From Macrostomum lignano (lineage: Eukaryota): DNA of 64,000 nucleotides. The position numbers and the translations under genes were made by a program. Each line of letters opens with the position of its first letter. Positions within the stretch are counted from its first letter, which is position 1. Of this stretch, positions 1 to 49,342 are shown in pieces. The notes beneath the pieces were generated by a model. It worked only from the letters and a program-made list of their open reading frames with translations, did no database searches and was not told where the DNA came from. The stretch covers positions 682,001 to 746,000 of the forward strand of contig NIVC01000006.1 in assembly GCA_002269645.1 (NCBI GenBank), written 5' to 3'.

Positions 1-3000
1 GTATTAGGATGGCTCTTCCGCGACGTGCACTTTGCATCGGATAGTACGGAGAAGAATCTGGATCGTCTGGACCACCACCATCATCGCCACCACCGCCACC
101 ACCTCCACCACCACCACCGCCATCATCGCCACCACCACCACCGCCACCATCGCCACCACCACCACCGCCATCTCCGCCGTGGCCGTTGCCTCTGTCGCTT
201 GGCTCCTCCACAGGAGAGTTGGATGGATCGCCGCTCTCTTCAGGTTGGTAGCCGCAGCCAGTTTCGCTATCAATACTTAATCCACTTTCGCTTCCTTCGC
301 TTGTTGGAGCGCGCTGTAATCTAAAATTATAATATTTTTTATTGTCTGTGTTTGAATACTAATCCAAAGTAACTACAAGATCAAGATGCAATAGCAAATA
401 ACTTACATCAAGCGTGAACAGTTGAGGTGACCCGAAAACTTCGCCCATTGATAAGCGTTCATATTCCTCTCTCCGGTCAGGCGCCAATAGTTCGCGTCTT
501 TCATCAACTCTCCGAATATTTCAATGACCTCGATGTGGCCGCAGCGAGCAGCCCAGATCAGAGGTGTGTTGCCGAAGCAATCTTTCAGCCATAAATTTGC
601 TCCGAAGTCACACAACATTTTGAAAGTTCCTGCGTGTCCCTTTTTCGCTGCGTGGACGGCAGCTGAGTATTTAAAAACGTCCTGAAAAACAATTGCATTT
701 TCTTAGGGTTTCATTCATACCAAAAAGGTTTAAATTTTTAACCTCACCTGGCAATCTATATCAGCTTGCATTTTGATGAGCTGCTCCAAAACAGATTTCT
801 GGTCATTTATGGCCGCCAGAATCAGCGGGGTTTGTCGAAGATTATCTTCTCTATTTACTTCTGTCGTCATAGTGCTAGCGTTGTTTGTCAATATTTTCTC
901 AAACGCTATCAGGACTTCTTTGTGGCCTTTGAGGGCGGCCCAGGAAATGGCTGTCCGACCCATTACATCCTGGACACTGACCAGGGATGTGTCAGAATTT
1001 CTATTGAGCAGCGATAGTACCAGGTCATGTTTGCCTCTGGCGGATGCGATTGTTAGCAGAGTCTGATTCAAAGTCCCAAACTTGTGGGCTGTATTCTCCT
1101 GAGATCTGCACAGGGCTGCAAGCTGCGCGTCCGACCACTTATCCGGGGACGCAGAGCTGAATATCCTAATTTGTGATGCGATAGATGGATGTAATGGATG
1201 TGATACGAGTATCTTTCACTTTTGATAGCCCCAGATGTATAGCATTTTATTTGTCTATCTAATAAAATAACAATTAAAACATCAAATGGAATTTTATTAT
1301 CAATGGTTGCTAATAAAGTTTGTACTTAAGAGATTAAAGCAGTGGTATCTGCGGATGTCTAAAACCAAGAAACATGGCTAACAGTGACAATAACTTACTG
1401 CACATCGTCAGATGCAGCGCTATTCAAGAAGAATTTCTTGGTCAGACTGGTGACTGCAGAAGCTTCAGTACCGAATTTTTCGGATCCACCTTTCATCTCG
1501 GGTATGCCCAGCCGCCTGTTCACCTCTGCCACCACGTTCACAATGTGCTCTTTGCTGAATATTTCCTCTTGAACGACGGAGCATAGAACCTCAGCAAGCG
1601 ATCCATTCTCTCCTAGTGAGCCACCGCGGCAGAGAAGAAAGTCTTTCTCAGGAAGTTTAAACGACGTCTCTTCCAGCGGGCAGGCGTTCAGGGTTTCAGG
1701 CTGCTGCTCAGTCTGAACAAAGAAGATCTTCGGTTTGCCCTTTAGAAAGGAGCACTGGTTGACTCGGAACCTGGCCACGATGTCTCTTACTTCGACCTCT
1801 TCACCGTCGCTAGCGAAGAAGCTGGCACCGGTCCCGTGTCCGATGATGAAGCACACGAAGCTGCCCATGTCGGGGAGATCGGACCTGACTATTTTGTTGA
1901 CCGCTGCAAAGATGTCAGCGCTAGTAGGCTTACTTGTGCATTGTTGGATTGTAAAACCAAGGTTTTCGAAGGTGTCGGTAATTATTTTAACTTCCTTCTG
2001 TTGGTTGTGGCTTGAGCTGCGATTGTAGGTCTCGACACTTATTACCAAGCACAGGCCTTTTGCCGTAATGATCTCTGCGTATATGTCGCTTTCCGGCTTG
2101 TTTGAAGTTGAACTGAATGAAAAGGTGCCAAATAGATTTCCATATATTTTCGCCACAATGATTCGAAAGATTCAAATTTTAGCAAAGATTTGTGTGAAGC
2201 TGACTTACGCGACAACTTGCTCTTTGCCAATCCTAACATGCGAATGAGCCCCATCAAACTGTAGCTCATGTTCCTCTTGGCCTTCCGTTTCAAACGCAGG
2301 AACCTTGCACGTCAGTCCTCCTTGTTCTGGTTTAGAAAAAATGTTTAAGTTAGTACTAGATGTACGTCACCTGGTGCCAGTGGCCAAAATATCCGGTCAA
2401 TTCGATATTCAAGCCTAGCCTTGTACGAAAAGCATGCATGTAGTTGCTTTACCTTTATTATAGATGAGAGGGTGCTTCATCAACTCAATAGCCAGCGTCC
2501 GGTCACGAGCTTGTTTTTTAGTGCATTTGTCATAGAAATCTTTCAGATTAGCCGAGCAACTTTCCGGAAGCACTGGAGCCCCCTGCCGTTCCACCCGGCG
2601 AACAATGGCCAGCATGTTCTTGCACTCCCAGTAGGGCCGTTTGGCGATCACCATCTGGTAGATCACGCAGCCGAACGCCCACACATCGGAGGCGCAGCTA
2701 TAGGGAGGGTCCTCGGTCTCAGAAGACAGGAACATCTCAGGCGCCATGAAGTGCGGGTCGCCTCTCTCCCCAGTGGACGGATGCTCCGTTACTGTTTGGA
2801 GAATCTGGATGGCCAGACCGAAATTGACGATCACAATTCGATCGCCCGGACAAACGAGCACCGTCTTGCAGTTGATGTTGCGGTGAATCACCGGATCGTT
2901 GAGACCGTGCAAATATGAAAGGGCGTCGCATATCTGAAATCAGTCGGTGATTCAGGATTTTAATATCGTAGTTTAAATAAGAATGGTGTAAGAAAGCAGC

Positions 3001-3556
3001 CGAACACGTTTTTAAAACCATTGCCAATTTTTACTGTCGTTTAAAAAAGTGGTCATGGACTTCTTAGTAAAGTCGTGTATTTTTTTATTAGCTCATTAGC
3101 TCGTAGAAGTCATTAAGACCCTTCGAGTACCCTTCAAGCCCTGGCTGGGTTCATGGCATAACAAACTTTCGATAATGTACAATTTTACAATTATTTATTA
3201 CGCACCTGTCTTGTAAGATTACAAATGCTCTTCTCAGGCAAGCCTTGTTGGGCGGTGATATGTCGTTCCAGAGTTACCGGTCCCGAAAGCAAGCTCATCT
3301 GTACGGTCACGCACATCTGCTCCTTGTCCACCATGATGCGCTTGAATTTGACCACGTTTTTGTGATCCAATGCGCACAGTTTCTTAGCCTCTTTGTCGCA
3401 AGCCTTAGTCAGAGTTTCTAGCTTATCATGAGCTCCAGCTTCGACAAGATGCCATGGCAAGCGGATTTGTTTTACAGCCTGCAGTTGCTCTGCCTCGCCC
3501 ACCGCTTCGGCGTAAGTTTCGCCTCGATCGCCTCTCGATAGAAGCTCCCGGACCAT
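1..3556 (-). CDS. Multidomain pseudokinase - pseudo-caspase - ankyrin repeats - Gly linker - caspase-like protein (paralog L; 3' end runs off the window)
   Basis: Hand-spliced exons on minus strand: 3556-3206, 2933-2453, 2326-2209, 2112-1399, 1156-748, 681-407, 320-<1. All introns are GT-AG and all junctions are in frame (phases 0,1,2,2,0,2), giving 889 codons in the window. Kinase motifs QAVK, HRNINCKT, NFG, FMAPE, DVWAFG. Caspase motifs KGLCLVI, FVCFIIGHG, LKGKPKIFFVQ. Ankyrin motifs GRTAISWAA, QTPLILAA, GNTPLIWAARCGH. Last exon reads ...GGGGDDGGGPDDPDSSPYYPMQSARRGRAILI, which is the typical caspase p20 N-terminus. Confidence 0.88.
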
Positions 3557-4780
3557 TGCTTGGCTTAGGGGAGAGTTTCAAAACAGTGTTTTACAGCTTC
3601 ATGTGAGCTTCAAATTTACCTGCAATTTTTTGCTAGTGCAGTTAATGTTTAACTGCAGTGTTTCTGCTTAGCCGTAAGAAAGTGGCAAGGCTTTTTAAAA
3701 GCTGTCTAGCTATAGTGTCATTGGTAGCAAGCTTACTCTGCCAAATAGAGGCTTGTTTCTCTTGCCATTATAATACCTTATCTGTCTTTTCTCTTTTCTA
3801 CCCCTATTTTTGTATGAAGAATTAAGTACAGTCTAGACAAGTACTTGCGTTGTAGGGTATAGACTGGGAGAGAAGTAATCTGGGGGAGGGTTAATGTACA
3901 TTAAGTACAGCACATTGCTGTCAGGCAGCATTCTGGAGAGTTTTACACACTGCTTTGCATATCAAATTGAAAAGAAAAGAAAAATAGTACAGCAAGAGTT
4001 GCATTTCATACCCATTTGTGCAGACGTTGTCTCTTGGCTCTCATGCCATTCCATAGCCAGCAATTCTTATCTATAGAACTTGCTCTCGTAGCATGGAGGC
4101 TTAAAACCAACTGGTTTGTAGTTAGAAATTTGGTACCTTATTCTACTGTACAGCGCTTTCCGCCTAGCTAGCTAGTGCAGCCAGTCCCTATCTGTCCTAT
4201 TTTAGAAAGAAACAGTCATTTGGTATATGAATAATAGCTAATTTCTCACTTAGTAGCTATATGTGAATTCGCTATTGGTAATTTCAACTAGCGGCCGTTG
4301 CTCACAGAAGCTTGTTGCAAACTTTTTTTGCCTGTAAAAAACTGTTGAAACATAACAACTAGTGAGAATTAAACAATCGCGAGTGCGACTGTTTGTGGCT
4401 TAAATACAAGGTAAGAAGCTTCACGACAAGTGCTTATTAGCTAATCGTACCAGCTTTTGTAGGTCCAAGCGACATGTAGCCCCTGTCAGTGACTCCGGGA
4501 GGCGTGGCGGGCCACATCATCCACGCCGAGTCACACTGCCCACAGGCGGAGTAGGAGGTGCTGCTGCTAGCGCTGCAAACGGGGAGGACAGACATGGGCT
4601 CGGCGCTTGTTAAACTGCCTTCTGGCTGACGACCGCGCACGCTCAAGCCTTCACACACGCTCTGTGGCGTGACGCTGCATTATACTGTTTTATTATCGTG
4701 TATGCATATAGGCTATCTGGGGTTAAATAATTATCCTATCTGTTGCTTTGTCCGAAGATATTTACGTTGACAAAAGACCG

Positions 4781-6144
4781 CAATGAGGCGGAAGGCCTTT
4801 TATTTTCAATAGATGTGCGGTGCGCACATGTGGCGTGGCGTGATTGGCTACGCCAACCCCCCTGGCTTAGCCAGCCGGCTAGCGCGGTACGCCACCACCC
4901 CACCTCAGCTAGACAGAGGTTGGCGGGGGGGGGGGTTTCCAGTGCGGCTGCACTGGTGCTGCCGGTCGCGTAGTCTGGCCGCCACACAGCTCCCCCCAAC
5001 ACCGAGCTAGGCCCCGAATGTCAGGTGATAGCCGTGCCGAGGAGCGGGCGCCGAAAGCATCGGAGGCAGAGGCGCCGAAGGCTGCGGAGCTGCAGAGGAG
5101 CGGGCGCAGAAATCAGCCGGGCCCCGAAGGCGGCAGGAGTGCGAGATGAGCGCAGAAGGCTGCCAGGGCACGAGGCGGGCGCCGAAGGTGGCAGAGGCGC
5201 GAGGCGGGCGCCGAAGGCGGCAGGGGCGCGAGGCGGGCGCCGAAGGTGGCAGAGGCGCGAGGCGGGCGCCGAAAACGGCAGGGGCGCGAGGCAGGCGCCG
5301 AAGGCGGCAGGGCGCCGAGCGGGCGCCGATGGCAGCAGGGCGCCGAGCGGGCACCAGGCGGGCGCCGAAAGCAGCAGGGGTGCCAGGCGGGCGCCGATGG
5401 CAGCAGGGGTGCCAGGCGGGCGCCGATGGCAGCAGGGGCGTCAGGCGGACGCCGATGGCAGCAGGGGCGTCGGCGGGCGCCGAAGTCGGCAGCGCGCCAG
5501 GAGGGCGCCAAAGGCAGCAGCAGGGGCGCGCGGCCGGACCAGACCAGAGGCAATCGACAGTCAGTTGCCGCCGTGAGCCGGGTCGATGCTCCTGCACAGA
5601 GGCTGGGGACGTTAGGCTAGCAGCAGCGGTGCTAACCTAGAGTTTGCTGCAGCGTGTGGCGCTGGTTGGTCCAACGCGGGGGCCGAAAAGCGAGACCCCA
5701 GGAGCTACCGGGGGGCGGGCTGACTGGGCCGATTCGTGCGGGGTACTGCTGTGGCTGCGGGGCTGCTGTGCTGCCGTTGCAGTCGGCCAAGGCAGTTGGC
5801 TGCCAGGACCGCACAGGGCCGACCAGGTAGGCCCAGCGTTCCGCGCTGGGAGTCGGGCTCACCAATGAGGCGGAAGGCCTTTTATTTTCAATAGATGTTG
5901 TGGCAGCGAAGATTGTGCACTGCGTTGCGCGTATATATTTATATGATTGAAAACAGCGCGAGATTATTGAGGGGCCTAGGGAGGTGCGCACATGTGGCGT
6001 GGCGTGATTGGCTACGCCAACCCCCCCCCCCCTGGCTTAGCCAGCCGGCTAGCGCGGTGCGCCACCACCCCACCTCAGCTAGACAGAGGTTGGCGGGGGG
6101 GGTTTCCAGTGCGGCTGCACTGGTGCTGCCGGTCGCGTAGTCTG
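4781..6144 (+). mobile_element. Element bounded by ~197-bp direct repeats (4781-4977 and 5863-6144, the second with an ~85-bp insertion) around a GC-rich core; type unresolved
   Basis: CAATGAGGCGGAAGGCCTTTTATTTTCAATAGATGT...GGTCGCGTAGTCTG occurs twice almost identically. No clear TG..CA ends, TSD or coding capacity seen. Confidence 0.5.
5040..5525. repeat. GC-rich ~29-bp minisatellite (GAGGCGGGCGCCGAAGGCGGCAGGGGCGC-like)
   Basis: Repeated AGGCGGGCGCCGA core visible; explains the low-complexity ORFs in several frames on both strands. Confidence 0.85.
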
Positions 6145-6178
6145 CCCCCCACAGCAACCTATTTTCCTTCACTTCAGC

Positions 6179-9100
6179 ATGGTCAAAAACTACTCAATCG
6201 GGGAACAGATCGGTCGAGGCGAGTATGCTAGTGTCCATGCCGTCACCATCAAGGACCGGAGCCCAACAGCCACTTGTGTAAAGCTGATCAAACTGCCAAC
6301 GAACTCTGAGCAAGTCTTAGACAAAAAAGAGCTCACTGAATTGGTAGAAAAACACAAGCCACTCAGAGAACTGAAACACCGGAACTTGATTCAAATTGAA
6401 GACCTTCATGTCATTCAACAAGACTACTCTATCGCAGTGTTCATGGAGCGGTTTCAAGGAAAAACATTGGAATATTTACTGAAAACAAAGGGTGCCATCA
6501 CCCAAGAAGATAAGATTCGGCACTACTCCAAGCAGGTGAGCACTGCATGGATTTCTATGACGTGTTAATTCACAAGCCCCATAACCAAACAGTCTCTGAC
6601 TTATTTCTAATTAATTAGTTGGTTTTTTATTTAATTAAGCACAATTCTCAACTTCTCTGCAGATCTGTGAAGCTTTGAAGTATCTTCACCACGACTTAAA
6701 GGACCCCGTCATTCACAGAAACATCTGCAGTAAAACAGTTATGATAGACGACAACGATTTAGTTAAGTTAATTGACTTTGGCATCTCCATTCAGCTGATT
6801 GATGCGGTGAGCCATCAGGTGACGCAGTGTCCGAGAGGCCATCCGAACTACATGGCTCCAGAGTTGTTCTTGGAGGAATCCCGCTCTGAAGTCCAGAGCC
6901 TCTACAGTCGGGGCTCAGACATCTGGGCTTTCGGTTGCGTTGTGTACGAGATGACCACTGGTGCGAAGCCGCTTGGAGATTGCAGAAACATGCTGGCCAT
7001 AGTTAACAAAATCAAATATCACGGAGCTCCAAACCTACCGGAGGCGAGCTCTGAGCAGCTGAGAGACTTCTATAAAGGCTGCATGAGAATGAATAGGAAA
7101 GAGAGAATGTCGGCAGCAGATCTGCTACGACACGAGTTTCTCAGTCCTGGTATGCAATTTTATGGTTTTTTGAGCTACATGTATATTTTTCACTGTTATT
7201 TTGGCTAGTTGTTAACTGATATAAGCTCTCTTTTAGTATATGACAAACACTGGGACAATGTCCGTCTGCTGAGCAGAGGAGGCTTCGCAGAAATTCACGA
7301 GGCTCTCACGGACAAGGGTATCCGTTGCGCCGTAAAAACTCTGAAGCTGCCCCTTCAACTCGGTGATCAACGGGACAAAGTGCAGAGAGAAACCGATCGA
7401 GCTATTGAAAGCGAGATGAACCTGTGCAGATTACGGCATGACAACATCGTAAAGATCTTTGACATTTTGCAGCCAGAAATTGCCACGGTTGTTGTGTTCA
7501 TGGAGCTGCTGGATGGCAAAACTTTGGAATTGGTGATAGATGGAAAACCACTGGATGAGGGAATGATTCGTCTTTTCGCTTCACAAGTAAGCATGAATAC
7601 TGAGTTGAATTATCAGGTTTGCTCATTATCCTGATCGCATTACTTTCGTTTACTCATATTTCAGATCTGCAGCGCACTTAGCTACATGCACAATCAGCCA
7701 GAAAAATCAGCCGTGATTCACAGAGACCTCAACTGCTCAAATATCGTGATTCTAGATGATAACAAGGTCAAGTTGATTGATTTTGGCTTATCGCACAGGC
7801 TAGGAACGTCGATTAGTCACAGCACCGCCTCGTCAGTGAAGGGCACGCTGAACTTCATGGCGCCGGAGCTACTGGGTGACGACGAAAAAATTGTGTACAG
7901 CACAGCATCAGATGTCTGGGCATTCGGTTGCGCCGTCTACCAGATGGCCACTGGAGAGCGGCCGTTCGAGAAAATTAAAAACCTAAATCGTCTTATTCAC
8001 ACTCTGAAAGAGCAAGGCGCCCAATTATTGCCAGATTCTTGTTCGAGTCTGCTGAAAGATTTCTATGCCAGTTGCGTTATGCGCCAGCGCTTGGAGAGGG
8101 CGTCCGCTATAACGTTGATGAAGCACGAGTTTCTGACTTTCAAGTAAGTCTGCTTGCATTTTGTCTATTAAAGTTCATATTTTTGTATCAACGATGGCTC
8201 TGTATTTTTGTACTTTTAGTCGAGCATATTGTTTCTTTTAATTCCTTTAATTAGAGCCTCGGAGTACGAGGATGAAGACCGATACGAATCCAGTGCTAGC
8301 CAGAAAGGAATGTGCGCAATCATTGACATGCTCCCATCTGGCTCGGACTCAAAACTCTCTGCTAAAATCAGCAAAAGTTTTGAAAAGTTCGATTTCATCG
8401 TCAAGTCGCTACCAGACGCAACCTGTCAAACCGCTTGGAGCTTCATCGGGGACATCGCAAACAGTCAAGAGCTTGCAGACTCGAAATGCTTTGTTTGTTT
8501 TGTTATAGCTTCCGGTTCGAACGGACATCTGTACTCAGCTGACAATGATGAGAGCATTGAAATCAGAGATCTGCTTGCCAGGTTTCGCTCTAGCCAGTGT
8601 CCCAGCCTGAAGGACAAGCCGAAGCTTTTCTTCATTCAGGCCGCGCAACCGGCCAGTGCAGCCGCCGGCTTGGACGAATCCACGACGCGAATTCGAGACG
8701 ATGACTTTCTGGTTTGCATCAACGATGCCGACCTGGATTCATCGTTTGTCGGGACATTGTGCACCGTTTTAGAAGAGGACAAATTTAGCGACTTAGACAT
8801 TGAAGGAGTTGTGGATGAGGTGAACAATCGCCTAAAACTGGAACCGTTGGTTAAAGCGAAAAACCGGGCTCTTAAATCCATGTCGGAAGCAGTTTCCACT
8901 TTGACGAAGAAATTTTACCTGAAGCCGGAACCGGTGAAACCGGATCCCAGGTGAGCTTTTTCGTTGTTTTAGAGGCTTATTGAGAAGAATGCACAAAAAT
9001 TAGCTAAATCAGCAACACTAATTGCTGGTATTCGAGGAGCACTTCATCCTGCAGACAAACAAGTTTCCAGTACCACCACCGAACTAACCTACTTATTAAC

Positions 9101-12100
9101 CTACTATTATTAACCTATTCGTCCTACTTTAACCTAATAAAGTAGGTTAGGTTAAGTTAAAGTAGGTTAGGTTAAAGTAGGTTAAAGTAGATTAGGTTAA
9201 AGTAGGTTAAAGTAGGTTAGGTTAAAGTAGGTTTATATTTTAAATATCATATTTAAAATGATCATATTTTAAATTATATATTAAACGATCATATTTTAAA
9301 TGATCGATACTCAATGAAACGATTGGGCCCGATGATGCCATCTTTGATCACTTCCACCACAAGAGCTTTATTTAAAACAGTTGTTTAGTGAATAGGAGGG
9401 ATTTCTTATTCTTCCCATTGATTCATACTGTTTAGCATAGAAAGATAACGAATATTTCAGAGCGGAGTCGCCAGAAAAGTGGGACGATGAACAATTGAAG
9501 AGGCTAATAGAGGAGGAGGCAAGTCAATGCGCGAACCCGGACTTCACCAGCCAAAAGTACGGCCCGTTAGGACAGACGCTGCTGTCGATCGCAGCAGACA
9601 AGGATAGCAGCGAGTTAGTCAAGCTTGCGCTCCAGACGGCGGCCACTTTTCCATCCATTCACTCAGATCTCGACGTGATGGGCAGGACGGCCCTTTCCTG
9701 CGCCGCAGCCAAAGGATCAGACGCGGTTCTGGCCGCTTTCGAGCAGGCATTCATCGATGCGGCCGATGTTCAGAAATCAGTGGTCAACGAAGCCAACTAT
9801 ATGCGCCAGACTCCTATCATTGTGGCAGCCAAGCAAAACAGGACGAATGTTCTCGAGAAGTTGGTCCGGATGGGAGCAGATATCAATCAGAAGGTGAGGC
9901 TGTGTTGATACTCACTAGTTTTACTCAACTATCAATCACAAAAATGTCCTATCAACTCTGAATCACAAAAACAGACAGAGACAGAAAGAAACAATCATGA
10001 TAGAAACCAAAGGCTGATTCAGTTCAAGAAGCAACTTTATCGCCTTTATCAAAGAGCTCAGGAACTTATACAGCGCAGACACATCCGCCCGGCCTCTGCA
10101 CGACCAAGCATGATGTTCTCTTTTACTGCCTCGATGACGGCCTTCTTAAAGCCATTGAAATGAAACAAATATGTTTGCGTTTTGCGATTGCCTACCTGCT
10201 TTCACGTTGGGTTTTTAGGAATTTTGAGACGCTTTAGTCCCGGTTCCGTCAGCAAGCTCTACTGCAGCATGGCCGGTTCCAAGGACCAGGCTGCCAAAAT
10301 TTAATTTTCAAAACAGTCGATTCTCTTTCGAAGTGTAGAACCCTTTTGCACTTTTTTCCGTATTTCAAGCACCTGGCAGGCAATTCGAATTCTTCCGATC
10401 AACTTGCTGGCTTCATGCTGCTCACATAATCCTTATCCAGATGCATCTTGCGGCAAAACGTTTGAAGGGTTTTAACTCTGGGTCTATAGTCGTCTGATCT
10501 GTATGACCTTTAGCATTTGTAAACATTCGATATTTGGCTACAAGTGGCCACTGGCCAGTTAGTGTTTATGACGTATGGCGTCTCTACGCTCGTACATTTC
10601 ATTATATTTGATTTCGTAAAAATTCTGCACATGCAGCTTATATATATGAATTTGCATTTCAGGATATTGTAGAAGCCACCGCATTAATCTACGCGGCTAA
10701 ATTCGGATTTGTTGACGCGGTGCGCAAGCTGCTGGAACTCGGCGCCGATGCAGCTCTCGCAGACCGTTCGGATCAAACACCGCTAATTTGGGCAGCTCGC
10801 TGTGGCCACACCGATGTTATCAACGCTCTATCTGAAAAGTTCAATAGTCTGGAGCCCTGGAACCACCGGAGCACGCGGTTGCGCAACTTAACCGCGCTTG
10901 AATGGGCTAAGCTCTGCGGCCATGATGCCACTGCGGACAGGATTCAGCAGCTGTAAGTAATTGGCGACGTAATTTTTGTTCCAATGGCTGAATGCTCTGT
11001 AGAAATCTGCACCTCCTGCTTTAATGGGCGTAGGAAATCGGCCGTCACGAGGGTCCTCCGTTTCCACCAGACCATTTAAAATTTTTCCGTGAATATCCTC
11101 TAAGCTACTTTAAACTTTTTCCTGTCTTGAACCCTCACAATGACACCCAGGAGCCATCCATGATCCTGTTAAGCCATTAAGAAGTTTTTAATTATTTAAA
11201 TATTTTAAATGATCGATGCAAACTATTTCAGAATTCAACAGATAACCGGAGCGACACAGGAGGCGGACGCCACTACCGACCCACAATCAAGGGGTGGCGG
11301 TGGCGGTGATGACGGTGCCAGTAGTGAAGCGACAGGAACTTCCGCCGGAAGTAGCCACGGAAGCGGAGGAAGCGGCGGCGGAGCCGTTGGTGGAGGAGGT
11401 GGTGCTGATGAAGTTGGTGGAAGGGGTGCCGGTGGCGGAGGTGCCGGTGGCGGAGGTGGTGGTGGCGGAGGTGGTGGTGGCGGAGGTGGCGGTGGCGGAG
11501 GTGGTGGTGGCTGGCCTATTTACCATATGAACAACCCAGTCAGAGGCCTAGCAATAGTTATCAGTCGGAACACGATTCCACCAAATGCAGGTTTTCAGAA
11601 CATACATTGGATGCCGGATCAGCAGACTCAATCTTTTGTCGGTTGTTTAAGCGACCTACGCTTCGATTTCTTAGTGCTACCAAATATTCCGAGAAACCTT
11701 TATTATAATCTCCGAACCACGGTACTCAATTGGCCGACGTATGCCACCTCTGATTCTCTTCTCCTCTGCCTGATGTCTTATGGCGAACACGGCCGAGTGT
11801 ATGACTGCAATGGAGAGCGTGTTGAGCTGGAAACAATGTTTCGACAGTTCAGAGAGTGTCCACTGCTCTCTGGTAAGCCGAAAATATTCATGGTCGATGC
11901 TGGTCGTGACATTCCTCATGAGAGACTGGTGTTGGAGCAGGCAATTCAGGAGAACGCGGGCCAGCACCAGGACTGTAATTACATTTACAGTGTTGTAAAA
12001 GGAAACGCCTGCTACCAAGAGGTAGAGAACGGCTTTTGCTTCATGCAGTCCATGGTGAATTTACTGCGCTGGCCAAGTTTCGATTCAGCCACGGAAGATT

Positions 12101-12210
12101 TTGCGTCCTTTCTGACGAAAGTCGTCAGCGACGTGTCGAACAAGTGCACAGCAAAGCAGATTGTCTGCCACACGAGCACCTTGCAGCGCCATATCATTTT
12201 AGGAAATTAA
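6179..12210 (+). CDS. 1356-aa tandem kinase (pseudokinase + kinase) - pseudo-caspase - ankyrin repeats - poly-Gly - pseudo-caspase protein (paralog R)
   Basis: Exons 6179-6535, 6663-7149, 7237-7586, 7665-8143, 8255-8950, 9461-9893, 10663-10952, 11232-12210 total 4071 nt (1357 codons). Every GT-AG junction keeps frame. Kinase 1: GRGEYA, CVK, HRNICSKT, DFG, YMAPE. Kinase 2: CAVK, HRDLNCSN, DFG, GTLNFMAPE. Caspase A: FVCFVIASG, LKDKPKLFFIQAAQ. Ankyrins: GRTALSCAA, QTPIIVAA, QTPLIWAARCGH. Caspase B: YHMNNPVRGLAIVI, LMSYG, LSGKPKIFMVDAGRD. Confidence 0.9.
9065..9310. repeat. Degenerate AGGTT(AAAGT) simple repeat with an upstream inverted copy, followed by AT-rich ATATTTTAAATGATC repeats (intron 5 of paralog R)
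   Basis: AACCTAC/CCTACTTTAACCTAA units precede AGTAGGTTAGGTTAAAGTAGGTT units. Confidence 0.65.
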
Positions 12211-13372: not shown

Positions 13373-14025
13373 CAGTGGCGTATACTCGAGAATTTTATTT
13401 GCAGGATTTGCAACATTACAGAGACCAGTATTTGGTCTCTAGGTTAATACCTCGATCGCTTGTTGGGCGCCCCTGTCTCTTGGTGGGTGCCCCTGTCTCT
13501 TGGTGGGCGCCCCTGTCTCTTGGTGGGCGCCCCTGTCTCTTGGTGGGCGCCCCTGTCTCTTGGTGGGCGCCCATATCTCTTGGTGGGCGCCCCTGTCTCT
13601 TGGTGGGCGCCCCTGTCTCTTGGTGGGCGCCCATATCTCTTGGTGGGCGCCCCTGTCTCTTGGTGGGCGCCCCTGTCTCTTGGTGGGCGCCCCTGTCTCT
13701 TGGTGGGCGCCCCTATCTCTTGGTGGGCGCCCCTGTCTCTTGGTGGGCGCCCATATCTCTTGGTGGGTGCCCCTGTCTCTTGGTGGGCGCCCCTGTCTCT
13801 TGGTGGGCGCCCCTGTCTCTTGGTGGGCGCCCCTGTCTCTTGTTGGGCGCCCATATCTCTTGGTGGGCGCCCCTGATCTCTTCTAACAAGAGAAGGTAAT
13901 TAAACACGAGCCCCTCTGTCATTCGTCAAGCTCGCGGTTACCTCTTATTTAGTTTCTTGGGGATTACAATTATTATAAAGGGGCCATTGGGGGGGGCACC
14001 TCCACCCTAGCTGCGTACGCCACTG
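13373..14025. mobile_element. hAT-like MITE (653 bp) with an internal 20-bp minisatellite
   Basis: 10-bp TIR CAGTGGCGTA...TACGCCACTG; perfect 8-bp TSD AGACATGT at 13365-13372 and 14026-14033. Confidence 0.85.
13445..13875. repeat. 20-bp minisatellite TTGGTGGGCGCCCCTGTCTC, about 21 copies
   Basis: Directly visible tandem units inside the MITE. Confidence 0.95.
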
Positions 14026-18700: not shown

Positions 18701-21700
18701 GCATTTTTGTTAAAACTAAGTCGCACAGCCAACAAAATTTTGGAGGTTGCGCATGTATGAGCAAGACACTTAACTCTGCATTGCTTTAGTTCACCCAGCT
18801 ATAAAATGGGTGCTAGTATTAGCTGGGATAATTGAGGGTGTATGTGGCAACCCCCTAGTCCTTGGACTGAACAGCTATATATGGCCTTCAGATGTGCCAT
18901 GCAATAGCTATGGCTGAGCTGTTGGTTGCACATCTGCTTATTATGGCAGATATAATCAATTATTATTATAATAATTATTATTATTAATTATATTATTGTT
19001 AATATTGCAATATAGAACTTATAAAGGTTGAATTTAGCCAAAATAGTAATTAAAAAATATAGTATCAAAGTAACAATCTTTAAATTTTTCTAAGATTTGT
19101 TAGTTGAATATTCCTAACTACATATTGTGTAATACTAGTGCCAATGTGAAAGGAAAATAAAATTATTTTAAAAAAATTTCTTTCCTCACAAAACTTTTAG
19201 CCTGCTTACTTTGGACCAGTGTGCCAATAATACTTTTGAAAACATTGGTCAGCAAGTGCAGAAGTATTTTACTAAACAAGATGGATTCAAGGTTGGCACT
19301 GCTTTGGTAAGTAGAAGAATGCTTCATATGCCATTTTTAATACTTTAATGGTAGAATTTGTGTTCAATTGTTAAAGGCAGGTGGGTGAAAGGTTGTGAAG
19401 GGAGGTCAGTGAAGGGAGGTGGGTAAAGGGAGGTGGATGAAGGGAGATGGAATGATGGATGAAAGGAGGTGGGTGAAGGGAGGTGGGTGAAGGGAGGTGG
19501 TGGAGGGAGGTAGGTAAGGGAGGTGGTGAAGGGAGGTGGGTGAATGGAGGTGGTGAAGGGAGGTGGGTGAATGGAGGTGGTGAAGGGAGGTGGGGGAAGG
19601 GAGGTGGGTGAACGGAAGTGAGGTTAAAAATGAACACCGACAGTTTTTGCATTCTCATCTCGCATTCTCTTCGCCAGGTGTTGCTCCTGCAGAACCCCGA
19701 TCTGCTGCCTAATCGGATGCAACAGCTGGTGGCTCTCTACCTGCTCTTGGAGTTGACCCGAGTTGACCCGCCCAATGTGAACCCATTTCAACCCGCGTTT
19801 GTTTACGCCATGCGATCGGACGAGAACGATACGAGGCATTTTCGCGTTCCCTGCCTGCCGCTGCAGGAGCGCGTGTTCTTGTACAGCCTGCTGCAGAGCA
19901 CCCACGCCAGCGGCCAGCCTTCTAGGGAACTCTTGAAGAAAACCCCTCAGCAGGTTTGTAAAACTGTTGGTGTCTGTCATCTTGAAATGCATGAGTCAGT
20001 GTTTCATTAATCATTTCGAGGCCATAAATCATATATCTGCAACCAAAAATCATCATTCAGAAACTAAAAATCATCATTCAGAAACCGAAATCATCATTCA
20101 GAAACTAAAAATCATCATTCAGAAGCCATAAATCATCATTCAGAAGCCATAAATCATCATTCAGAAGCCATAAATCATCATTCAGAAGCCATAAATCATC
20201 ATTCAGAAGCCATAAATCATCATTCAGAAACTATAAATCATCATCAAAATCCAAGAATCATCATTCAGAAACCATAAATCATCATTCAGAAACCATAAAT
20301 CATCATTCAGAAACCATAAATCATCATTCAGAAACCATAAATCATCATTCAGAAGCCATAAATCATCATTCAGAAGCCATAAATCATCATTCAGAAGCCA
20401 TAAATCATCATTCAGAAGCCATAAATCATTACTCAGAAACCATAAATCATCATTCAGAAACAAAAAATCATCATTCAGAAACCATAAATCATCATTCAGA
20501 AACCATAAATCATCATTCAGAAACCATAAATCATCATTCAGAAACCATAAATCATCATTCAGAAGCCATAAATCATCATTCAGAAGCCATAAATCATCAT
20601 TCAGAAGCCATAAATCATCATTCAGAAACTATAAATCATCATCAAAATCCAAGAATCATCATTCAGAAACCATAAATCATCATTCAGAAACCATAAATCA
20701 TCATTCAGAAACCATAAATCATCATTCAGAAACCATAAATCATCATTCAGAAACAAAAAATCATCATTCAGAAACCATAAATCATCATTCAGAAACTATA
20801 AATCATCATCAAAATCCAAGAATCATCATTCAGAAACCATAAATCATCATTCAGAAACCATAAATCATCATTCAGAAACCATAAATCATCATTCAGAAAC
20901 AAAAAATCATCATTCAGAAACCATAAATCATTACTCAGAAACCATAAATCATCATTCAAAAACCATAAATCATCATTCAGAAACCATAAATCATCATTCA
21001 GAAACCATAAATCATTACTCAGAAACCATAAATCATCATTCAAAAACCATAAATCATCATTCAGAAACCATAAATCATTACTCAGAAACCATAAACCATC
21101 ATTCAAAAACCATAAATCATCATTCAGAAACCATAAATCATAATTCAGAAACCATAAATCATCATTCAGAAACCATAAATCATTACTCAGAAACCATAAA
21201 TCATCATTCAGAAACCATAAATCATCATTCAGAAACCATAAATCATCATTCAGAAACAAAAAATCATCATTCAGAAACCATAAATCATTACTCAGAAACC
21301 ATAAATCATCATTCAAAAACCATAAATCATCATTCAGAAACCATAAATCATCATTCAGAAACCATAAATCATTACTCAGAAACCATAAATCATCATTCAA
21401 AAACCATAAATCATCATTCAGAAACCATAAATCATTACTCAGAAACCATAAACCATCATTCAAAAACCATAAATCATCATTCAGAAACCATAAATCATTA
21501 CTCAGAAACCATAAATCATCATTCAGAAACCATAAATCATTACTCAGAAACCATAAATCATCATTCAGAAACCATAAATCATCATTCAGAAACCATAAAT
21601 CATCATTCAGAAACCATAAATCATCATTCAGAAACCATAAATCATCATTCAGAAACAAAAAATCATCATTCAGAAACCATAAATCATTACTCAGAAACCA

Positions 21701-23612
21701 TAAATCATCATTCAAAAACCATAAATCATCATTCAGAAACCATAAATCATCATTCAGAAACCATAAATCATCATTCAGAAACAAAAAATCATCATTCAGA
21801 AACCATAAATCATCATTCAGAAACCATAAATCATCATTCAGAAACCATAAATCATCATTCAGAAACAAAAAATCATCATTCAGAAACCATAAATCATTAC
21901 TCAGAAACCATAAATCATCATTCAAAAACCATAAATCATCATTCAGAAACCATAAATCATTACTCAGAAACCATAAATCATCATTCAAAAACCATAAATC
22001 ATCATTCAGAAACCATAAATCATCATTCAGAAACCATAAATCATCATTCAGAAACCATAAATCATCATTCAGAAACCATAAATCATCATTCAGAAACCAT
22101 AAATCATCATTCAGAAACAAAAAATCATCATTCAGAAACCATAAATCATTACTCAGAAACCATAAATCATCATTCAAAAACCATAAATCATCATTCAGAA
22201 ACCATAAATCATAATTCAGAAACCATAAATCATTACTCAGAAACCATAAATCATCATTCAAAAACCATAAATCATCATTCAGAAACCATAAATCATCATT
22301 CAGACGCCATAAATTATCCCCAAATCACCGCAGATAGCCAACAGTGTATTCCCGCCCAACGTGATTCCCAGCGAGCTGGACCTGAGTTTCCTAGAAAGCC
22401 CATACGCGGAGCGGGCCAAGGAGATGCCGGTGGTGAGTCGGGTTGCTATGCCGTGCGTCCTGTCCGATCCCGAGCGCCGTCTGGCCTCGATGGAATCTTA
22501 CAGCGGCTCGGGCAGCTCTGCGGAGGCCCAGCGCCAGGTGCTGGACTCGCTGCTCACTGGTGACCAGGCAGCTGTCCGATCTCACCTGCGGCCGGAGTTT
22601 CTCCTGCTGGCGCCGCCGCTGCACAGCGTCGGGATCGAGGACGAACTCGTGTGGATGTCGCCGACTGGCCTTGAGCACACCGCTCAGTGGGACGCCTCTA
22701 TGTGCCAGAGCGGCTCTTCCGGGGGTGAGTGACATTTGAAGGTCAAACTAGTTATTTTCTAAGCTGCTAAAATGCTACAGGTGTCGAATCTCACCCAACA
22801 TCACCTGAGAATCTCACCCAACCCCACCTGAGAATCTCACCCAACCCCATCTGAGAATCTCACCCAACCCCATCTGAGAATCTCACCCAACCTCGTCTAA
22901 TCTCACCCAACCCCACCTGTGAATCTCACCCAACCTCACCTGAGAATCTCACCCAACCCCTATCCTCCCAGCCGAGACCCGGAAGCTGATGGTGCGGGCC
23001 TTCAAGCAGACTCTGCAACAGTCGCAGATTCGCCAGCTAAACGAGGCCATCTCCCAGGATCCCAAGCTGATCAGCCTAAGCGGCATGTCTCCATCCCGGC
23101 TGCCCGAACTGGTTGAGCACAATCCCCTGGTTGCTATCGAGGTGCTGCTCACCCTGATGAAGGCCAGCTCGCCCCAAGTCACGGACTATTTCTCTGTCCT
23201 AGTGAACATGGAGATGTCCCTGCACAGCATGGAGGTTGTCAACCGCCTGACAACCAGTGTTGAACTGCCTGCGGAGTTCATCCACCTGTACATCAGCAAC
23301 TGCATATCGTCGTGCGAGTCAACCAAGGACAAGTACATGCAGAACAGGCTGGTCAGGCTGGTGTGCGTGTTCCTGCAGTCGCTGATCCGCAATAAGATTA
23401 TTGACGTCAAGAATATCTACATCGAGGTGCAGGCTTTCTGCATCGAGTTCAACCGCATCCGGGAGGCTGCTGGCCTGTTCCGGCTGCTAAAATCCTTGGA
23501 GTCCAGCGATGGCAGCGTCGACTCCGCCGCCGCTTCTGCCGCTCTGGCTGCTGGCGGCGGCGGCCCGGGTTCGAATCCGCCTAGCGCCGCCACCACGCCT
23601 TCGAAGCCGTAG
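15758..23612 (+). CDS. CNOT11: CCR4-NOT complex subunit 11 (C2orf29 / DUF2363), 483 aa
   Basis: Exons 15758-15795, 19201-19306, 19678-19953, 22334-22724, 22972-23612 total 1452 nt, all in frame. N-terminus [12 protein letters not shown]...TFE...[23 protein letters not shown] and C-terminus [16 protein letters not shown]...[59 protein letters not shown] match the recognisable CNOT11 sequence. Confidence 0.95.
16940..17592. mobile_element. MITE (653 bp) with 8-bp TSD (hAT-like), CNOT11 intron 1
   Basis: 16-bp TIR CCATAGTGCGGAAGGA...TCCTTCCGCACTATGG; TSD CCTAGGCC at 16932-16939 and 17593-17600; subterminal GTA(C/T)GACA motifs. Confidence 0.8.
18124..18420. mobile_element. hAT-like MITE family A, copy 1 (297 bp)
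   Basis: TIR CATACATGCGCAAC / GTTGCGCATGTGTG; 8-bp TSD TGTAGCCT at 18116-18123 and 18421-18428. Confidence 0.85.
18514..18759. mobile_element. hAT-like MITE family A, copy 2 (246 bp, opposite orientation)
   Basis: Perfect 14-bp TIR CATACATGCGCAAC...GTTGCGCATGTATG; TSD AGCAAGAC at 18506-18513 and 18760-18767; internal sequence is the reverse complement of copy 1. Confidence 0.88.
19375..19622. repeat. Purine/G-rich simple repeat (GAAGGGAGGTGGGT-like), CNOT11 intron 2
   Basis: Directly visible tandem units. Confidence 0.85.
20030..22312. repeat. 21-bp minisatellite AAATCATCATTCAGAAACCAT, about 108 copies, filling CNOT11 intron 3
   Basis: Directly visible; produces the spurious (NDDLWFL)n ORFs. 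Confidence 0.97.
22790..22960. repeat. ~20-bp repeat TGAGAATCTCACCCAACCCC, CNOT11 intron 4
   Basis: About 8 units visible. Confidence 0.85.
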
Positions 23613-23699: not shown

Positions 23700-24535
23700 T
23701 AAGCTAAGCCATTCTAAGAATCTTCCTATAAATAAAACATTTTCTAATCGTCTCAACGAGCCATTTTCTAAGAATCGTCCCAATTAACTATTTTCTAAGA
23801 GTCGTCCTATAAACAGATTTCTAAGAATTATCCCAATCTGCCATTTTCCAAAAATCTTCCTATAAGCCAGTTTCTAAGAATCGTCCTATAAACAGTTTTC
23901 TAGGAATCGCTCTATAAACAGATTTCTAAGAATTATCCCAATCTGCCATTTTCCAAAAATCTTCCTATAAGCCAGTTTCTAAGAATCGTCCTATAAACAG
24001 TTTTCTAGGAATCGCTCTATAAACCGATTTCTAAGAATCGCTCTATAAGCTAGTTTCTAAGAATCTTCCTATAGGCCATTTTCTGAAAATCGCTCTATAA
24101 GCCAGTTTCTAAGAATCTTCCTATAGGCCATTTTCTAAGAATCGCTTTATAAGCCAGTTTCTAAGAATCTTCCTATCGGCCATTTTCTAAGAATCGCTTT
24201 ATAAGCCAGTTTCTAAGAATCTTCCTATCGGCCATTTTCTAAGAATCGCTTTATAAGCCAGTTTCTAAGAATCTTCCTATCGGCCATTTTCTAAGAATCG
24301 CTTTATAAGCCAGTTTCTAAGAATCTTCCTATCGGCCATTTTCTAAGAATCGCTTTATAAGCCAGTTTCTAAGAATCTTCCTATCGGCCATTTTCTAAGA
24401 ATCGCTTTATAAGCCAGTTTCTAAGAATCTTCCTATAGGCCATTTTCTAAGAATCGCTTTATAAGCCAGTTTCTAAGGATCGTCTTATCAACAGTTTTCT
24501 AAGAATCGCTCTATAAAAAATTTCTAAGAATCGTC
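23700..24535. repeat. 26-bp monomer / 52-bp dimer minisatellite with TTTCTAAGAATC core
   Basis: Alternating AAGCCAGTTTCTAAGAATCTTCCTAT and CGGCCATTTTCTAAGAATCGCTTTAT units in the central part. Confidence 0.9.
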
Positions 24536-25051
24536 CCTTGAGTTTCGAGTTGAAGTATCTCTGTTGTTTTCTCTGCTTTTGCATCTGTTAATGTTTGAGT
24601 TCAAAACCCCTGAATTAAAATGCATGTACCTGACACGGCATTTTGTAAGCATCTAGATACTTGAAGTAGTTAAGGTGTAACTAGGCTGTTAGTAATATTA
24701 ATTAATTGTTATGATAGGTTCTGTCGTTCTATTTACTGCTTGACTTCTTTGCATTGCTGATTTGTATTTCTGAATGATAATAACGTTAAAACTTCTTCTA
24801 GTTTTACCCGTGTTCAACTAACTGTCTGTCTAAAATCTTGTTGTCTATTGCCCCATCCTGACTGTTGATATATACTCCTTAGTACGAGTATTTTATAAGG
24901 AAAATTTAAAATAAACAATAAATCATCAGTGCAACATTGAGATTTGTTTGTGTACATCTCCCTTATCGCCTCTAGTGTTTGTGAAATCCTTATGAATATT
25001 TTTATTGTCGATTGTTTCTATCTAAAAAAAATTAACTTGGTGTGCCATCTA

Positions 25052-25565
25052 AGGGTGAGATTTAGGTTTGAGGCTGTACTATCTATCTCGGGATGAGATT
25101 TAGGTTTGAGGCTGTGCTATCTATCTCGGGATGAGATTTAGGTTTGAGGCTGTGCTATCTATCTCGGGATGAGATTTAGGTTTGAGGCTGTACTATCTAT
25201 CTCGGGATGAGATTTAGGTTTGAGGCTGTACTATCTATCTCAGGGTGAGATTTAGGTTTGAGGCTGTGCTATCTATCTCGGGATGAGATTTAGGTTTGAG
25301 GCTGTACTATCTATCTCAGGGTGAGATTTAGGTTTGAGGCTGTGCTATCTATCTCAGGGTGAGATTTAGGTTTGAGGCTGTACTATCTATCTCAGGGTGA
25401 GATTTCTGTTTGAGTCTGTACTATCTCAGGGTGAGACTTCTGTTTGAGGCTGTGCTATCTATCTCAGGGTGAGATTTCGGTTTGAGGCTGTACTATCTAT
25501 CTCAGGGTGAGACTTCTGTTTGAGTCTGTACTATCTCAGGGTGAGACTTCCATTTGAGGTTGTTC
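25052..25565. repeat. 38-bp minisatellite GGATGAGATTTAGGTTTGAGGCTGT(A/G)CTATCTATCTCG
   Basis: About 13 units visible. Confidence 0.92.
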
Positions 25566-36556: not shown

Positions 36557-36654
36557 TGCAAAAAGATTTTTTTATTAAAACACCTTAAAAACACAACAAA
36601 ACTGCTAAACATCAAAGAAGCGCAATGTCAAACATAGAAGAGCCAACATATCGA

Positions 36655-41155: not shown

Positions 41156-41254
41156 ATTTACACAATTTCAAACGTAAACGTAAGCGTCATGCCAATTTTA
41201 AAGGAGCCACTATAGAGCTAAGGAAATTGTAGCACTAGCTACTTATTGTATGGT

Positions 41255-48957: not shown

Positions 48958-49036
<79 letters not shown>

Positions 49037-49129
49037 TTCTGTCTGTCTGTCTGTCTATCTGTCTGTCTGTCTGCCTGTCTGTTAGAGTGTCTGTCTGTCT
49101 GTCTGTCTGTCTTTCTGTCTGTCTGTCTT

Positions 49130-49192
<63 letters not shown>

Positions 49193-49265
49193 TTCTGTCT
49201 GTCTGTCTGCCTGTCTGTTAGAGTGTCTGTCTTTATGTCTGTCTGTCTGTCTGTCTGTCTGTCTT

Positions 49266-49326
<61 letters not shown>

Positions 49327-49342
49327 GTGTCTGTCTGTCTGC

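What the first reader, a model, noticed from the sequence alone, without database searches (positions are those of the whole stretch)
1399..12210. All three visible caspase active sites are dead, each by different substitutions
Seen versus canonical SHG and QACRG: L-caspase A has GHG but QTEQQ; R-caspase A has ASG and QAAQP; R-caspase B has SYG and DAGRD. The S1 Arg loop (SWR...GSWF) reads CYQ...GFCF in R-caspase B and is unrecognisable in the A domains, yet KPKxF and the p20/p10 framework are retained. Inference: selection for fold rather than catalysis, like c-FLIP. Two pseudo-caspases in one chain could form an intramolecular dimer, or bind true caspases or pathogen caspase inhibitors as bait.
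Basis: partly seen in the sequence, partly recalled or inferred. Interest (0 to 1): 0.72.

Follow-up and report, generated by a model that had tools for sequence, protein, structure and literature searches.

The report
Flatworm gene pair of dead caspases
Two head-to-head genes of the flatworm Macrostomum lignano encode large kinase–caspase–ankyrin–caspase proteins in which all four caspase-like domains have lost the catalytic cysteine but keep the fold, and they sit about 25 kb from a sister gene pair whose second caspase is intact, which looks like an independently evolved c-FLIP-type arrangement.

Summary
The window is Macrostomum lignano contig NIVC01000006.1. It holds two divergently transcribed paralogs. 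The part of L caspase B outside the window was recovered: it keeps His but reads QANRG, so all four domains lack the nucleophile. AlphaFold models of R-B and L-A are confident and match caspase-3/7/8. Structural columns are conserved while catalytic and S1 columns are lost. All exons are open, and rates are no higher than in a live paralog, so these are maintained pseudo-caspases rather than decaying exons. The A position is dead in every paralog examined. B is intact in the neighbouring head-to-head pair (P0008 and a P0130-like gene) on the same contig. The ground plan therefore resembles coral caspase-X or a c-FLIP/caspase-8 pair in one chain, and L/R are fully dead derivatives. Their action as regulators of the live neighbours is inferred, not shown. 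A 2024 paper noted one M. lignano "kinase pro-domain caspase" without examining active sites.

The parts
2..3556 (-). L gene (NCBI PAA94593.1 / BOX15_Mlig003293g4, annotated 'partial', 846 aa). My full model is 1098 aa. Exons: 3556-3206, 2933-2454, 2327-2208, 2111-1398, 1164-748, 681-407, 319-2, continuing about 620 nt beyond the window's left edge.
2454..3556 (-). L pseudokinase. VAIK Lys is kept, but the motifs read HRN (2891-2862), catalytic-loop Asn replaced by Thr, and NFG (2828-2811).
   Evidence: Pfam; motif alignment
1398..2111 (-). L caspase A (pseudo-caspase): GHG / QTEQQ, L3 loop deleted.
407..1164 (-). L ankyrin-repeat region (two exons).
2..319 (-). Start of the last L exon: Gly/Asp-rich linker and the first residues of L caspase B (YYPMQSARRGRAILI). 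The rest is off the window (L002:10001-10732) and reads SHG / QANRG.
3557..6178 (.). Shared 2.6 kb intergenic region between the divergent L and R starts. It contains a GC-rich 58/87-bp tandem array (5118-5534) flanked by ~175-bp direct repeats (4819-4990 and 5983-6155).
6179..12210 (+). R gene, 1356 aa. Exons: 6179-6535, 6663-7148, 7236-7586, 7665-8144, 8256-8951, 9462-9893, 10663-10953, 11232-12210. UniRef model A0A1I8GSV6 (P0001) mis-splices the last exon.
6179..7148 (+). R kinase 1 (pseudokinase): HRN (6708-6737) and catalytic-loop Asn replaced by Thr; DFG is kept.
7236..8144 (+). R kinase 2. All catalytic residues are kept (Lys, HRD 7713-7742, Asn, DFG 7776-7793), so it is probably active.
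8256..8951 (+). R caspase A (pseudo-caspase): ASG / QAAQP, L3 loop deleted.
9462..10953 (+). R ankyrin-repeat region (two exons: 9462-9893 and 10663-10953).
11232..11511 (+). R Gly-rich linker, including a run of about 25 Gly (11446-11511). It is entered through the consensus acceptor ctatttcag| at 11231, in phase with the donor CT|GTAAGT at 10953/10954.
11512..12207 (+). R caspase B (pseudo-caspase): SYG / DAGRD / CYQ...GFCF. All five catalytic/S1 residues are replaced.

Best explanation
L and R are two divergently transcribed, lineage-specific paralogs of Macrostomum lignano from a family with this ground plan: Ser/Thr kinase or pseudokinase, pseudo-caspase (A), ankyrin repeats, low-complexity linker, caspase (B). 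In every member examined, A is a non-catalytic caspase fold that has lost its substrate loop. In most members B is a canonical caspase. In L and R, B has also lost the nucleophile, so L has no predicted catalytic activity in any of its three enzyme-like domains, and R keeps only one intact kinase. Shown: the homology, the residue states, the predicted fold, the open reading frames, the conserved splice phase, and the linkage to a live pair. Inferred: (1) A serves as a built-in dimerisation partner for B through the conserved last beta-strand, as c-FLIP(L) does for procaspase-8 and as the inactive domain does in coral caspase-X. (2) L and R arose by duplication within the cluster and now act as non-cleaving regulators, scaffolds or competitors of the live neighbours P0008 and the P0130-like gene. 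They would do this either by pairing with the neighbours' B domains in trans or by competing for the same ANK or kinase ligands. My separate estimates: the domains are catalytically dead, 0.9; they are maintained by selection, 0.75; they act on live paralogous caspases, about 0.4.
For: Residue states. Fold: AF2 pLDDT 87.3 / pTM 0.87 for R-B and 84.9 / 0.86 for L-A; Foldseek top hits are caspase-3/7/8 at E 1e-18 and 1e-13. Gene integrity: the same phase-2 intron joins ANK to B in L, R and P0008; the R model length of 1356 aa equals the gene called on the contig. Constraint: Tajima tests show L-B and R-B are no faster than the live P0008-B (p 0.1-0.9) and only moderately faster than P0130-B. L-B and R-B group as sisters (78% NJ bootstrap) at 37% identity without any stop codon. 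The dead A domain of P0130 has omega 0.22 between homeologs (4N/5S, p=0.03), and the whole gene 0.27 (p=1e-5). L-A and R-A differ from second-copy proteins at only 1.2-1.9% of residues. Live paralogs: P0008-B is SHG/QSCRD/SGR and P0130-like B is SHG/QACRG/SFR, verified in genomic DNA at about 645.7-657.1 kb of the same contig. That pair has the same head-to-head orientation as L/R at 681.4-694.2 kb. Precedents: caspase-X (PMC4715348) and FLIP(L) (PMC7586951, listed).
Against: No expression, interaction or activity data were examined. No dN/dS could be measured on L or R themselves because no second-copy DNA was obtainable. R-B is the most diverged domain (26-37% identity) and is significantly faster than P0130-B (p=0.0002). 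Public annotations omit or mis-frame both B exons. A second copy of R (P0002) has a frameshift-like stretch inside caspase A, which could be an assembly error or a real lesion. The domain trees conflict (A: L groups with P0008; B: L groups with R), so the duplication history is unresolved. Whether A and B contact each other could not be evaluated.
Confidence: 0.5

Rival explanations
1. L and R are redundant duplicates on their way to becoming pseudogenes in a recently polyploid, repeat-rich genome. On this view the dead sites reflect relaxed selection and the domains have no function.
For: R-B and L-B evolve faster than P0130-B. The annotations call L 'partial' and miss or mis-frame caspase B. 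P0002 has a frameshift-like segment in caspase A. Several near-identical family copies exist.
Against: The 1356 and 1098 codons across 8 and 7 exons contain no stop or frameshift, and the splice sites are consensus and conserved. Structural columns are fully kept. The AF2 models are confident. Rates equal those of the live P0008-B. L-B and R-B are only 37% identical yet both open, which by my rough estimate has a probability of order 1e-6 under neutral drift. Amino-acid divergence between copies is low.
Confidence: 0.12
2. The proteins are kinase-centred signalling scaffolds. R's intact second kinase, with the pseudokinase as a JAK-like regulatory partner, would be the effector. The caspase folds and ANK repeats would be docking modules unrelated to caspase regulation.
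For: R kinase 2 keeps all catalytic residues next to a pseudokinase. A large M. lignano kinase-ANK family exists without caspase domains. P0009 has ANK, kinase and dead A but no B.
Against: L has no live kinase at all. The B position is a canonical caspase in the closest relatives, which ties the family to proteolysis.
Confidence: 0.15
3. The dead caspase folds are decoys or baits that bind pathogen-encoded caspase inhibitors or proteases, or sense them.
For: The evidence is circumstantial: a lineage-restricted, clustered, fast-diverging family with repeat-type interaction domains.
Against: Nothing in the sequence points to a pathogen ligand. No known pathogen of this worm was considered. The S1 and L3 substrate-binding loops, which inhibitors normally engage, are deleted in the A domains.
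Confidence: 0.1
4. One or more of the domains are not dead and use a non-canonical catalytic arrangement. Candidates are His plus Glu in L-A (also in P0008-A), His plus Asn in L-B, or a Cys in the L3 loop of R-B.
For: His is retained in L-A and L-B. Glu at the Cys position is shared by L-A, P0121-A and P0008-A. P0130-A has Cys and His swapped (GCG...QTH). R-B carries Cys at the SWR and GSWF positions and a His three residues after the canonical one.
Against: To my knowledge no caspase-fold enzyme uses Glu or Asn as nucleophile. The S1 arginines are lost and the L3 loop is deleted or altered. R-A and R-B have neither residue of the dyad.
Confidence: 0.05

Closest known systems
c-FLIP(L) (CFLAR), the vertebrate pseudo-caspase
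   Same: It is a caspase-fold domain lacking the catalytic Cys (and His), retained for its fold. It is encoded next to its live paralogs after tandem duplication (CASP8/CASP10/CFLAR; my own knowledge) and is thought to act by pairing with a live caspase domain (PMC7586951).
   Different: L and R have no death-effector domains (Pfam). They carry two pseudo-caspase domains per chain plus a kinase or pseudokinase and ANK repeats. The origin is independent, within a flatworm lineage. No interaction has been demonstrated.
Coral caspase-X (Acropora; PMC4715348)
   Same: It has tandem caspase domains in one chain, with the N-terminal one inactive and the C-terminal one active. This is the same order as the ground plan of this family (P0008, P0130). 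The inactive domain was shown to damp killing and was modelled as a c-FLIP/procaspase-8-like pair.
   Different: In L and R the second domain is dead too. The two domains are separated by about 225 aa of ANK repeats and a Gly-rich linker of about 100 aa. A kinase is fused at the N-terminus. The host phylum is different, so this is presumably convergent.
[quoted passage not shown]
   Same: The organism is the same, and the ANK-plus-caspase module is the same as the C-terminal half of L, R, P0008 and P0130. The paper places an M. lignano kinase-caspase as sister to ANK-caspases.
   Different: The paper describes one protein. It does not mention active-site loss, two caspase domains, pseudokinases or genomic pairing. 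It states that ANK-caspases are restricted to parasitic flatworms, whereas ANK-caspase modules are evident here in free-living M. lignano.
JAK-type pseudokinase-kinase tandem
   Same: R has a degenerate kinase (HRN, Asn replaced by Thr) immediately N-terminal to an intact kinase. JAK2 appeared among two-domain hits.
   Different: There are no FERM or SH2 domains. The kinase domains resemble a generic Ser/Thr mix (PLK, MAP3K, PAK, STK24, BRAF) and not JAK or RIPK specifically.

Membership tests
Caspase (peptidase C14A) as a homologous fold | Caspase/hemoglobinase fold with p20- and p10-like halves | tested here: met
   PF00656 E 2e-16 to 9e-21. AF2 plus Foldseek give TM 0.8-0.85 to caspase-3/7/8.
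Caspase (peptidase C14A) as an enzyme | Catalytic Cys in QACxG and His in SHG | tested here: not met
   The Cys is replaced by Glu (L-A), Asn (L-B), Ala (R-A) and Gly (R-B). The His is kept in L-A and L-B and lost in R-A (Ser) and R-B (Tyr).
Caspase (peptidase C14A) as an enzyme | S1 pocket Arg179, Gln283 and Arg341 (caspase-1 numbering) for P1 Asp | tested here: not met
   R-B has Ile, Asp and Gln at these positions. The A domains have Ser at the first Arg and the L3 loop deleted. L-B keeps the first Arg and the Gln but lacks the L3 Arg.
c-FLIP-like pseudo-caspase | Tandem death-effector domains N-terminal to the pseudo-caspase | tested here: not met
   No DED hit in Pfam scans of the L and R exons or the paralogs.
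c-FLIP-like pseudo-caspase | Heterodimerises with a live initiator caspase and modulates it | not testable with these tools
   Only indirect evidence: the last beta-strand motif (xVTSLTKKFFL) is the best-conserved stretch of the A domains, and live paralogs lie next door.
Caspase-X-type tandem caspase | Inactive N-terminal plus active C-terminal caspase domain in one chain | tested here: not met
   Met by the paralogs P0008 and P0130. Not met by L and R, where both domains are inactive.
Flatworm ANK-caspase clade | Ankyrin-repeat pro-domain directly N-terminal to the caspase domain | tested here: met
   ANK repeats (PF12796 and others) precede caspase B in R, L, P0008, P0130, P0132/4 and P0136.
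Flatworm ANK-caspase clade | Phylogenetic grouping with Schistosoma and other parasitic-flatworm ANK-caspases | not tested
   None of the ten nearest named outside hits was a parasitic-flatworm protein. The sister relationship rests on PMC11463336 only.
Active eukaryotic protein kinase | VAIK Lys, HRD Asp, catalytic-loop Asn and DFG Asp | tested here: inconclusive
   The result is mixed across the three kinase domains. R kinase 2 has all four. R kinase 1 lacks the HRD Asp and the Asn. The L kinase lacks the HRD Asp, the Asn and the DFG Asp.

The most novel reading that the evidence does not exclude
Macrostomum, a flatworm from a phylum reported to have lost FADD (PMC11463336), may have built its own caspase-control module. 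In this reading, genomically paired kinase-pseudocaspase-ANK-caspase proteins are self-contained 'pre-dimerised' initiators. A duplicated, fully dead pair (L and R, one of them a triple pseudoenzyme) acts as their c-FLIP-like brake or specificity switch. That would be an independent reinvention of the caspase-8/c-FLIP/kinase logic within single polypeptides.
Probability: 0.3. Interest if true: 0.7.

Novelty: new variant of a known kind. Interest (0 to 1): 0.55.

Why it matters
Pseudo-caspases are rare: FLIP(L) is described as the only human one (PMC7586951), and how they control live caspases is a central question in cell-death signalling. This locus offers a natural series in one genome. It has a dead A plus live B in one chain, a dead A plus dead B next door, and kinases in live and dead states fused to them. 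Macrostomum lignano is a transgenic-tractable, regenerating model animal. The locus also corrects the record in three ways. Public gene models drop or mis-frame the second caspase domain. The 'kinase pro-domain caspase' reported in 2024 belongs to a multi-member family. ANK-caspase modules are not confined to parasitic flatworms. If the inferred regulator role is wrong, the locus is still a clean example of repeated pseudoenzyme formation within a multi-domain protein.

Tried and rejected
(1) A word-indexed homology search with R caspase B found nothing. The domain is unannotated and too diverged, and the exhaustive HMMER search was needed.

(2) Exact-product look-ups for P0001, P0008 and P0121 failed, so DNA for second copies of L and R could not be obtained and direct dN/dS on L and R was impossible.

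(3) A RIPK-like identity for the kinase was suggested by weak RIPK4 hits. It is not supported: the best PDB matches are a generic mix.

(4) A cGAS/Mab-21-like sensor domain in the relative P0136 rests on a sub-threshold Pfam hit (21.9 bits against a cut-off of 24.1) and has no PDB sequence match, so I left it as a hint.

(5) A simple 'duplication of the whole head-to-head pair' history is not cleanly supported. The A-domain tree pairs L with P0008, while the B-domain tree pairs L with R.

(6) No further family members lie elsewhere in the window or downstream of P0009.

(7) An intramolecular A-B contact could not be assessed, because the structure tool returns no coordinates or inter-domain error estimates.

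(8) The supplement of PMC11463336 is not held, so I could not establish which accession they described.
Full report
WHAT THE WINDOW IS. The ORF pattern is eukaryotic, with short open exons. A protein search with the spliced right-hand gene returned a 100% match to a Macrostomum lignano UniRef model (P0001). A locus fetched from NCBI assembly GCA_002269645.1 (L002, contig NIVC01000006.1) is 100% identical to window 10112-1 over 10,112 bases. The window is therefore positions 682,001-746,000 of that 1.11 Mb contig of this free-living flatworm.

GENE MODELS. Two genes start 2.6 kb apart and run in opposite directions. R lies on the plus strand at 6179-12210 and has eight exons. P0001 supports the first seven. 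Its last exon is read from a weak acceptor (acacag| at 11259) in the +1 frame, which turns the Gly-rich linker into a Val/Ala/Glu-rich tail and truncates the protein. The consensus donor CT|GTAAGT (10953/4), joined to the pyrimidine-rich acceptor ctatttcag| (11231), keeps the frame into the linker and caspase B. This gives 1356 aa, exactly the length of the gene called on the NCBI contig. L lies on the minus strand from 3556 to 2 and beyond, with seven exons. Its NCBI model (PAA94593.1, BOX15_Mlig003293g4, 'partial', 846 aa) and the UniRef models of a near-identical copy (P0121, P0122) all stop after the ANK region. The same phase-2 intron (AT|GTAAGT ... TTTTAG|A) joins ANK to a Gly/Asp-rich linker and a caspase domain. 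That domain starts at window 319-2 and continues off the window. The collection holds it as a separate 243-aa call (P0131), located at L002:10001-10732 on the same contig. The full L model is 1098 aa. The 'L|I' junction is also present in the annotated paralog P0008.

THE OBSERVATION. A MAFFT alignment of the family's domains shows a 6-9-residue deletion of the L3 (S1-arginine) loop in all A domains. I then used 60 outside caspases as a yardstick, in which 38 columns are at least 80% conserved. The structural columns are kept in every L and R domain. All four caspase-like domains of the two genes lack the nucleophile.

FOLD. AlphaFold2 with a 66-sequence alignment gives confident models for R-B (pLDDT 87.3, pTM 0.87) and L-A (84.9, 0.86). 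Foldseek against the PDB returns only caspases at the top: R-B at TM 0.84-0.85 and E about 2e-18 to (pro)caspase-3, and L-A at TM up to 0.8 and E about 2e-13 to caspase-7/6/8. Coordinates are not returned, so I could not inspect whether another Cys/His pair sits in the cleft. By sequence, R-B has a His three residues after the canonical position and Cys residues in the L3 region, and L-A and L-B keep the His. A non-canonical activity is therefore unlikely but not excluded.

KINASES. The alignment of the family's kinase domains gives three results. The L kinase has HRN, Thr for the catalytic-loop Asn, and NFG. R kinase 1 has HRN and Thr. R kinase 2 keeps Lys, HRD, Asn and DFG. L is thus predicted inactive in all three of its enzyme-like domains, and R keeps one live kinase behind a pseudokinase. 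The kinase is not specifically RIPK-like; its best PDB matches are PLK, MAP3K, PAK, STK24, ASK1 and BRAF.

THE FAMILY. The exhaustive HMMER search with R-B found as nearest relatives only M. lignano proteins:
- P0130 (PAA89054.1, 1072 aa), which has kinase (HRQ), A (GCG/QTH), ANK and B (SHG/QACRG/SFR).
- P0131, which is L-B.
- P0008, which has kinase, A (GHG/QAEKQ), ANK and B (SHG/QSCRD/SGR).
- P0132 and P0134, which have ANK and a caspase (QACRL).
- P0136 and P0279, which have an unknown N-terminal region, ANK and a caspase (QACRH).

P0009 has ANK, kinase and A (AKAG/HTLAN) with no B downstream. So A is dead in every member, and B is canonical everywhere except in L and R. In an NJ tree, all A domains form one clade and all B domains another. 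Beyond these, the hits are ordinary metazoan caspases at about 25-30% identity.

GENOMIC CONTEXT. On the same contig, about 25-36 kb to the left, lies a second head-to-head pair in the same orientation. P0008 is on the minus strand at about 645.7-650.3 kb, and a 98%-identical copy of P0130 is on the plus strand at about 651.8-657.1 kb. Both have live B motifs, verified in the DNA. A homeologous copy of that pair is on contig NIVC01000166.1. A 'live' pair and a 'dead' pair are therefore neighbours.

IS THE FOLD UNDER SELECTION? Five lines of evidence bear on this.
(a) All 15 exons are open, with consensus splice sites that are conserved in phase.
(b) Paralogs are 26-61% identical per domain. 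L-B is as close to a live B (41% to P0130-B) as live B domains are to each other (38-43%).
(c) In Tajima relative-rate tests, L-B and R-B have more unique changes than P0130-B (39 vs 19, p=0.009; 43 vs 15, p=0.0002, with the P0132 outgroup) but not more than the live P0008-B (p 0.1-0.9). Live P0008-B is itself faster than P0130-B (p=0.036).
(d) L-B and R-B group together (78% bootstrap) and share derived motifs. If the loss of Cys predates their split, they have since diverged to 37% identity without a single stop codon.
(e) Between the two homeologous copies of the live pair (dS about 0.04), the dead A domain of P0130 has omega 0.22 (4 nonsynonymous vs 5 synonymous, binomial p=0.03). That is similar to the whole gene at 0.27 (p=1e-5).

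For L and R themselves only second-copy proteins were available. L-A differs at 4 of 213 residues and R-A at 2 of 169. Against roughly 9% expected for neutral change at dS 0.04, this implies omega of about 0.1-0.2, but it assumes those copies are homeologs of the same age. Overall, maintained pseudo-caspases are much better supported than decay, although the direct test on L and R is still missing.

MECHANISM (inferred). Caspase domains are activated by dimerisation across the last beta-strand. c-FLIP(L) uses a dead caspase fold to pair with procaspase-8 (PMC7586951). Coral caspase-X carries an inactive and an active caspase domain in one chain, and the inactive one damps killing and was modelled as a c-FLIP/procaspase-8-like pair (PMC4715348). 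The M. lignano ground plan (dead A, ANK, live B) fits the same logic. The last-strand motif (xVTSLTKKFFL) is also the best-conserved stretch of the A domains. L and R, with B dead as well, cannot cleave. The most economical reading is that they are non-cleaving partners, competitors or scaffolds for the live neighbours. This is analogous to CFLAR sitting beside CASP8 and CASP10, which I state from my own knowledge. I put this at about 0.4. The alternatives are a kinase-centred scaffold, a pathogen decoy, decay, and residual non-canonical catalysis.

WHAT IS KNOWN. [quoted passage not shown] It does not mention active sites, a second caspase domain, pseudokinases or gene pairing. The present locus is therefore a new variant of known kinds (pseudo-caspase, tandem caspase). 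It has an unreported architecture and an unreported all-dead state, in a family whose existence has been noted once.

VERDICT. I rate the interest as moderate to good (0.55).

Noticed in passing
window 11232-11530 (+), window 4-324, and protein P0001: The Gly-rich linkers are encoded by GGN microsatellite-like runs, about 25 consecutive Gly in R. In other frames they read as His-rich or Val/Ala-rich ORFs. The UniRef model A0A1I8GSV6 (P0001) ends in exactly such an off-frame tail because it uses a weak acceptor at 11259.
   Followed up: yes
window 4819-4990 and 5983-6155; 5118-5534: In the L/R intergenic region, two direct repeats of about 175 bp (92.7% identical) flank a 60% GC block that holds a 58/87-bp tandem array. 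This could be an inserted repeat element inside the shared promoter region.
   Followed up: no
P0130 (L004:12434-13093) and its copy on L003:6661-5999: The dead A domain of P0130 has the dyad residues swapped: Cys at the canonical His position (GCG) and His at the canonical Cys position (QTH).
   Followed up: no
P0002 (second copy of R), corresponding to window 8611-8769: The second-copy model carries a 35-residue stretch inside caspase A that equals the window's alternative frame (RNRPVQPPAWTNPRREFETMTFWFASTMPTWIHRL). This is either a 1-bp indel in that copy or an assembly error.
   Followed up: partly
P0132/P0134, P0136/P0279, and L003/L004: Free-living M. lignano has several ANK-plus-caspase proteins with canonical active sites, whereas PMC11463336 states that ANK-caspases are restricted to parasitic flatworms. 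P0136 has a sub-threshold Mab-21_C Pfam hit N-terminal to ANK-caspase, which a PDB sequence search did not confirm.
   Followed up: partly
A-domain versus B-domain trees: The relationships are mosaic. L-A is 61% identical to P0008-A, but L-B is only 31% identical to P0008-B and groups with R-B. This suggests gene conversion or exon exchange among clustered paralogs, or strong rate differences.
   Followed up: partly
window 13459-13882, 20022-22318, 23759-24538, 25047-25536, 26225-26882, 36607-41156, 45287-47192, 48886-49944, 54926-56342, 58413-58920, 62279-63610: The window is very rich in tandem satellites. Examples are a 21-bp unit at 110 copies, a 23-bp unit at 198 copies spanning 4.5 kb, a 27-bp unit at 71 copies, and (GTCT)n at 265 copies. 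These arrays produce many long spurious ORFs.
   Followed up: partly
hits, for example P0178 and P0167: Other invertebrate caspase homologs in the hit list also have dead sites (P0178 FEAGRG; P0167 TYG/QAYKD), so pseudo-caspases may be commoner outside vertebrates than the literature suggests.
   Followed up: no
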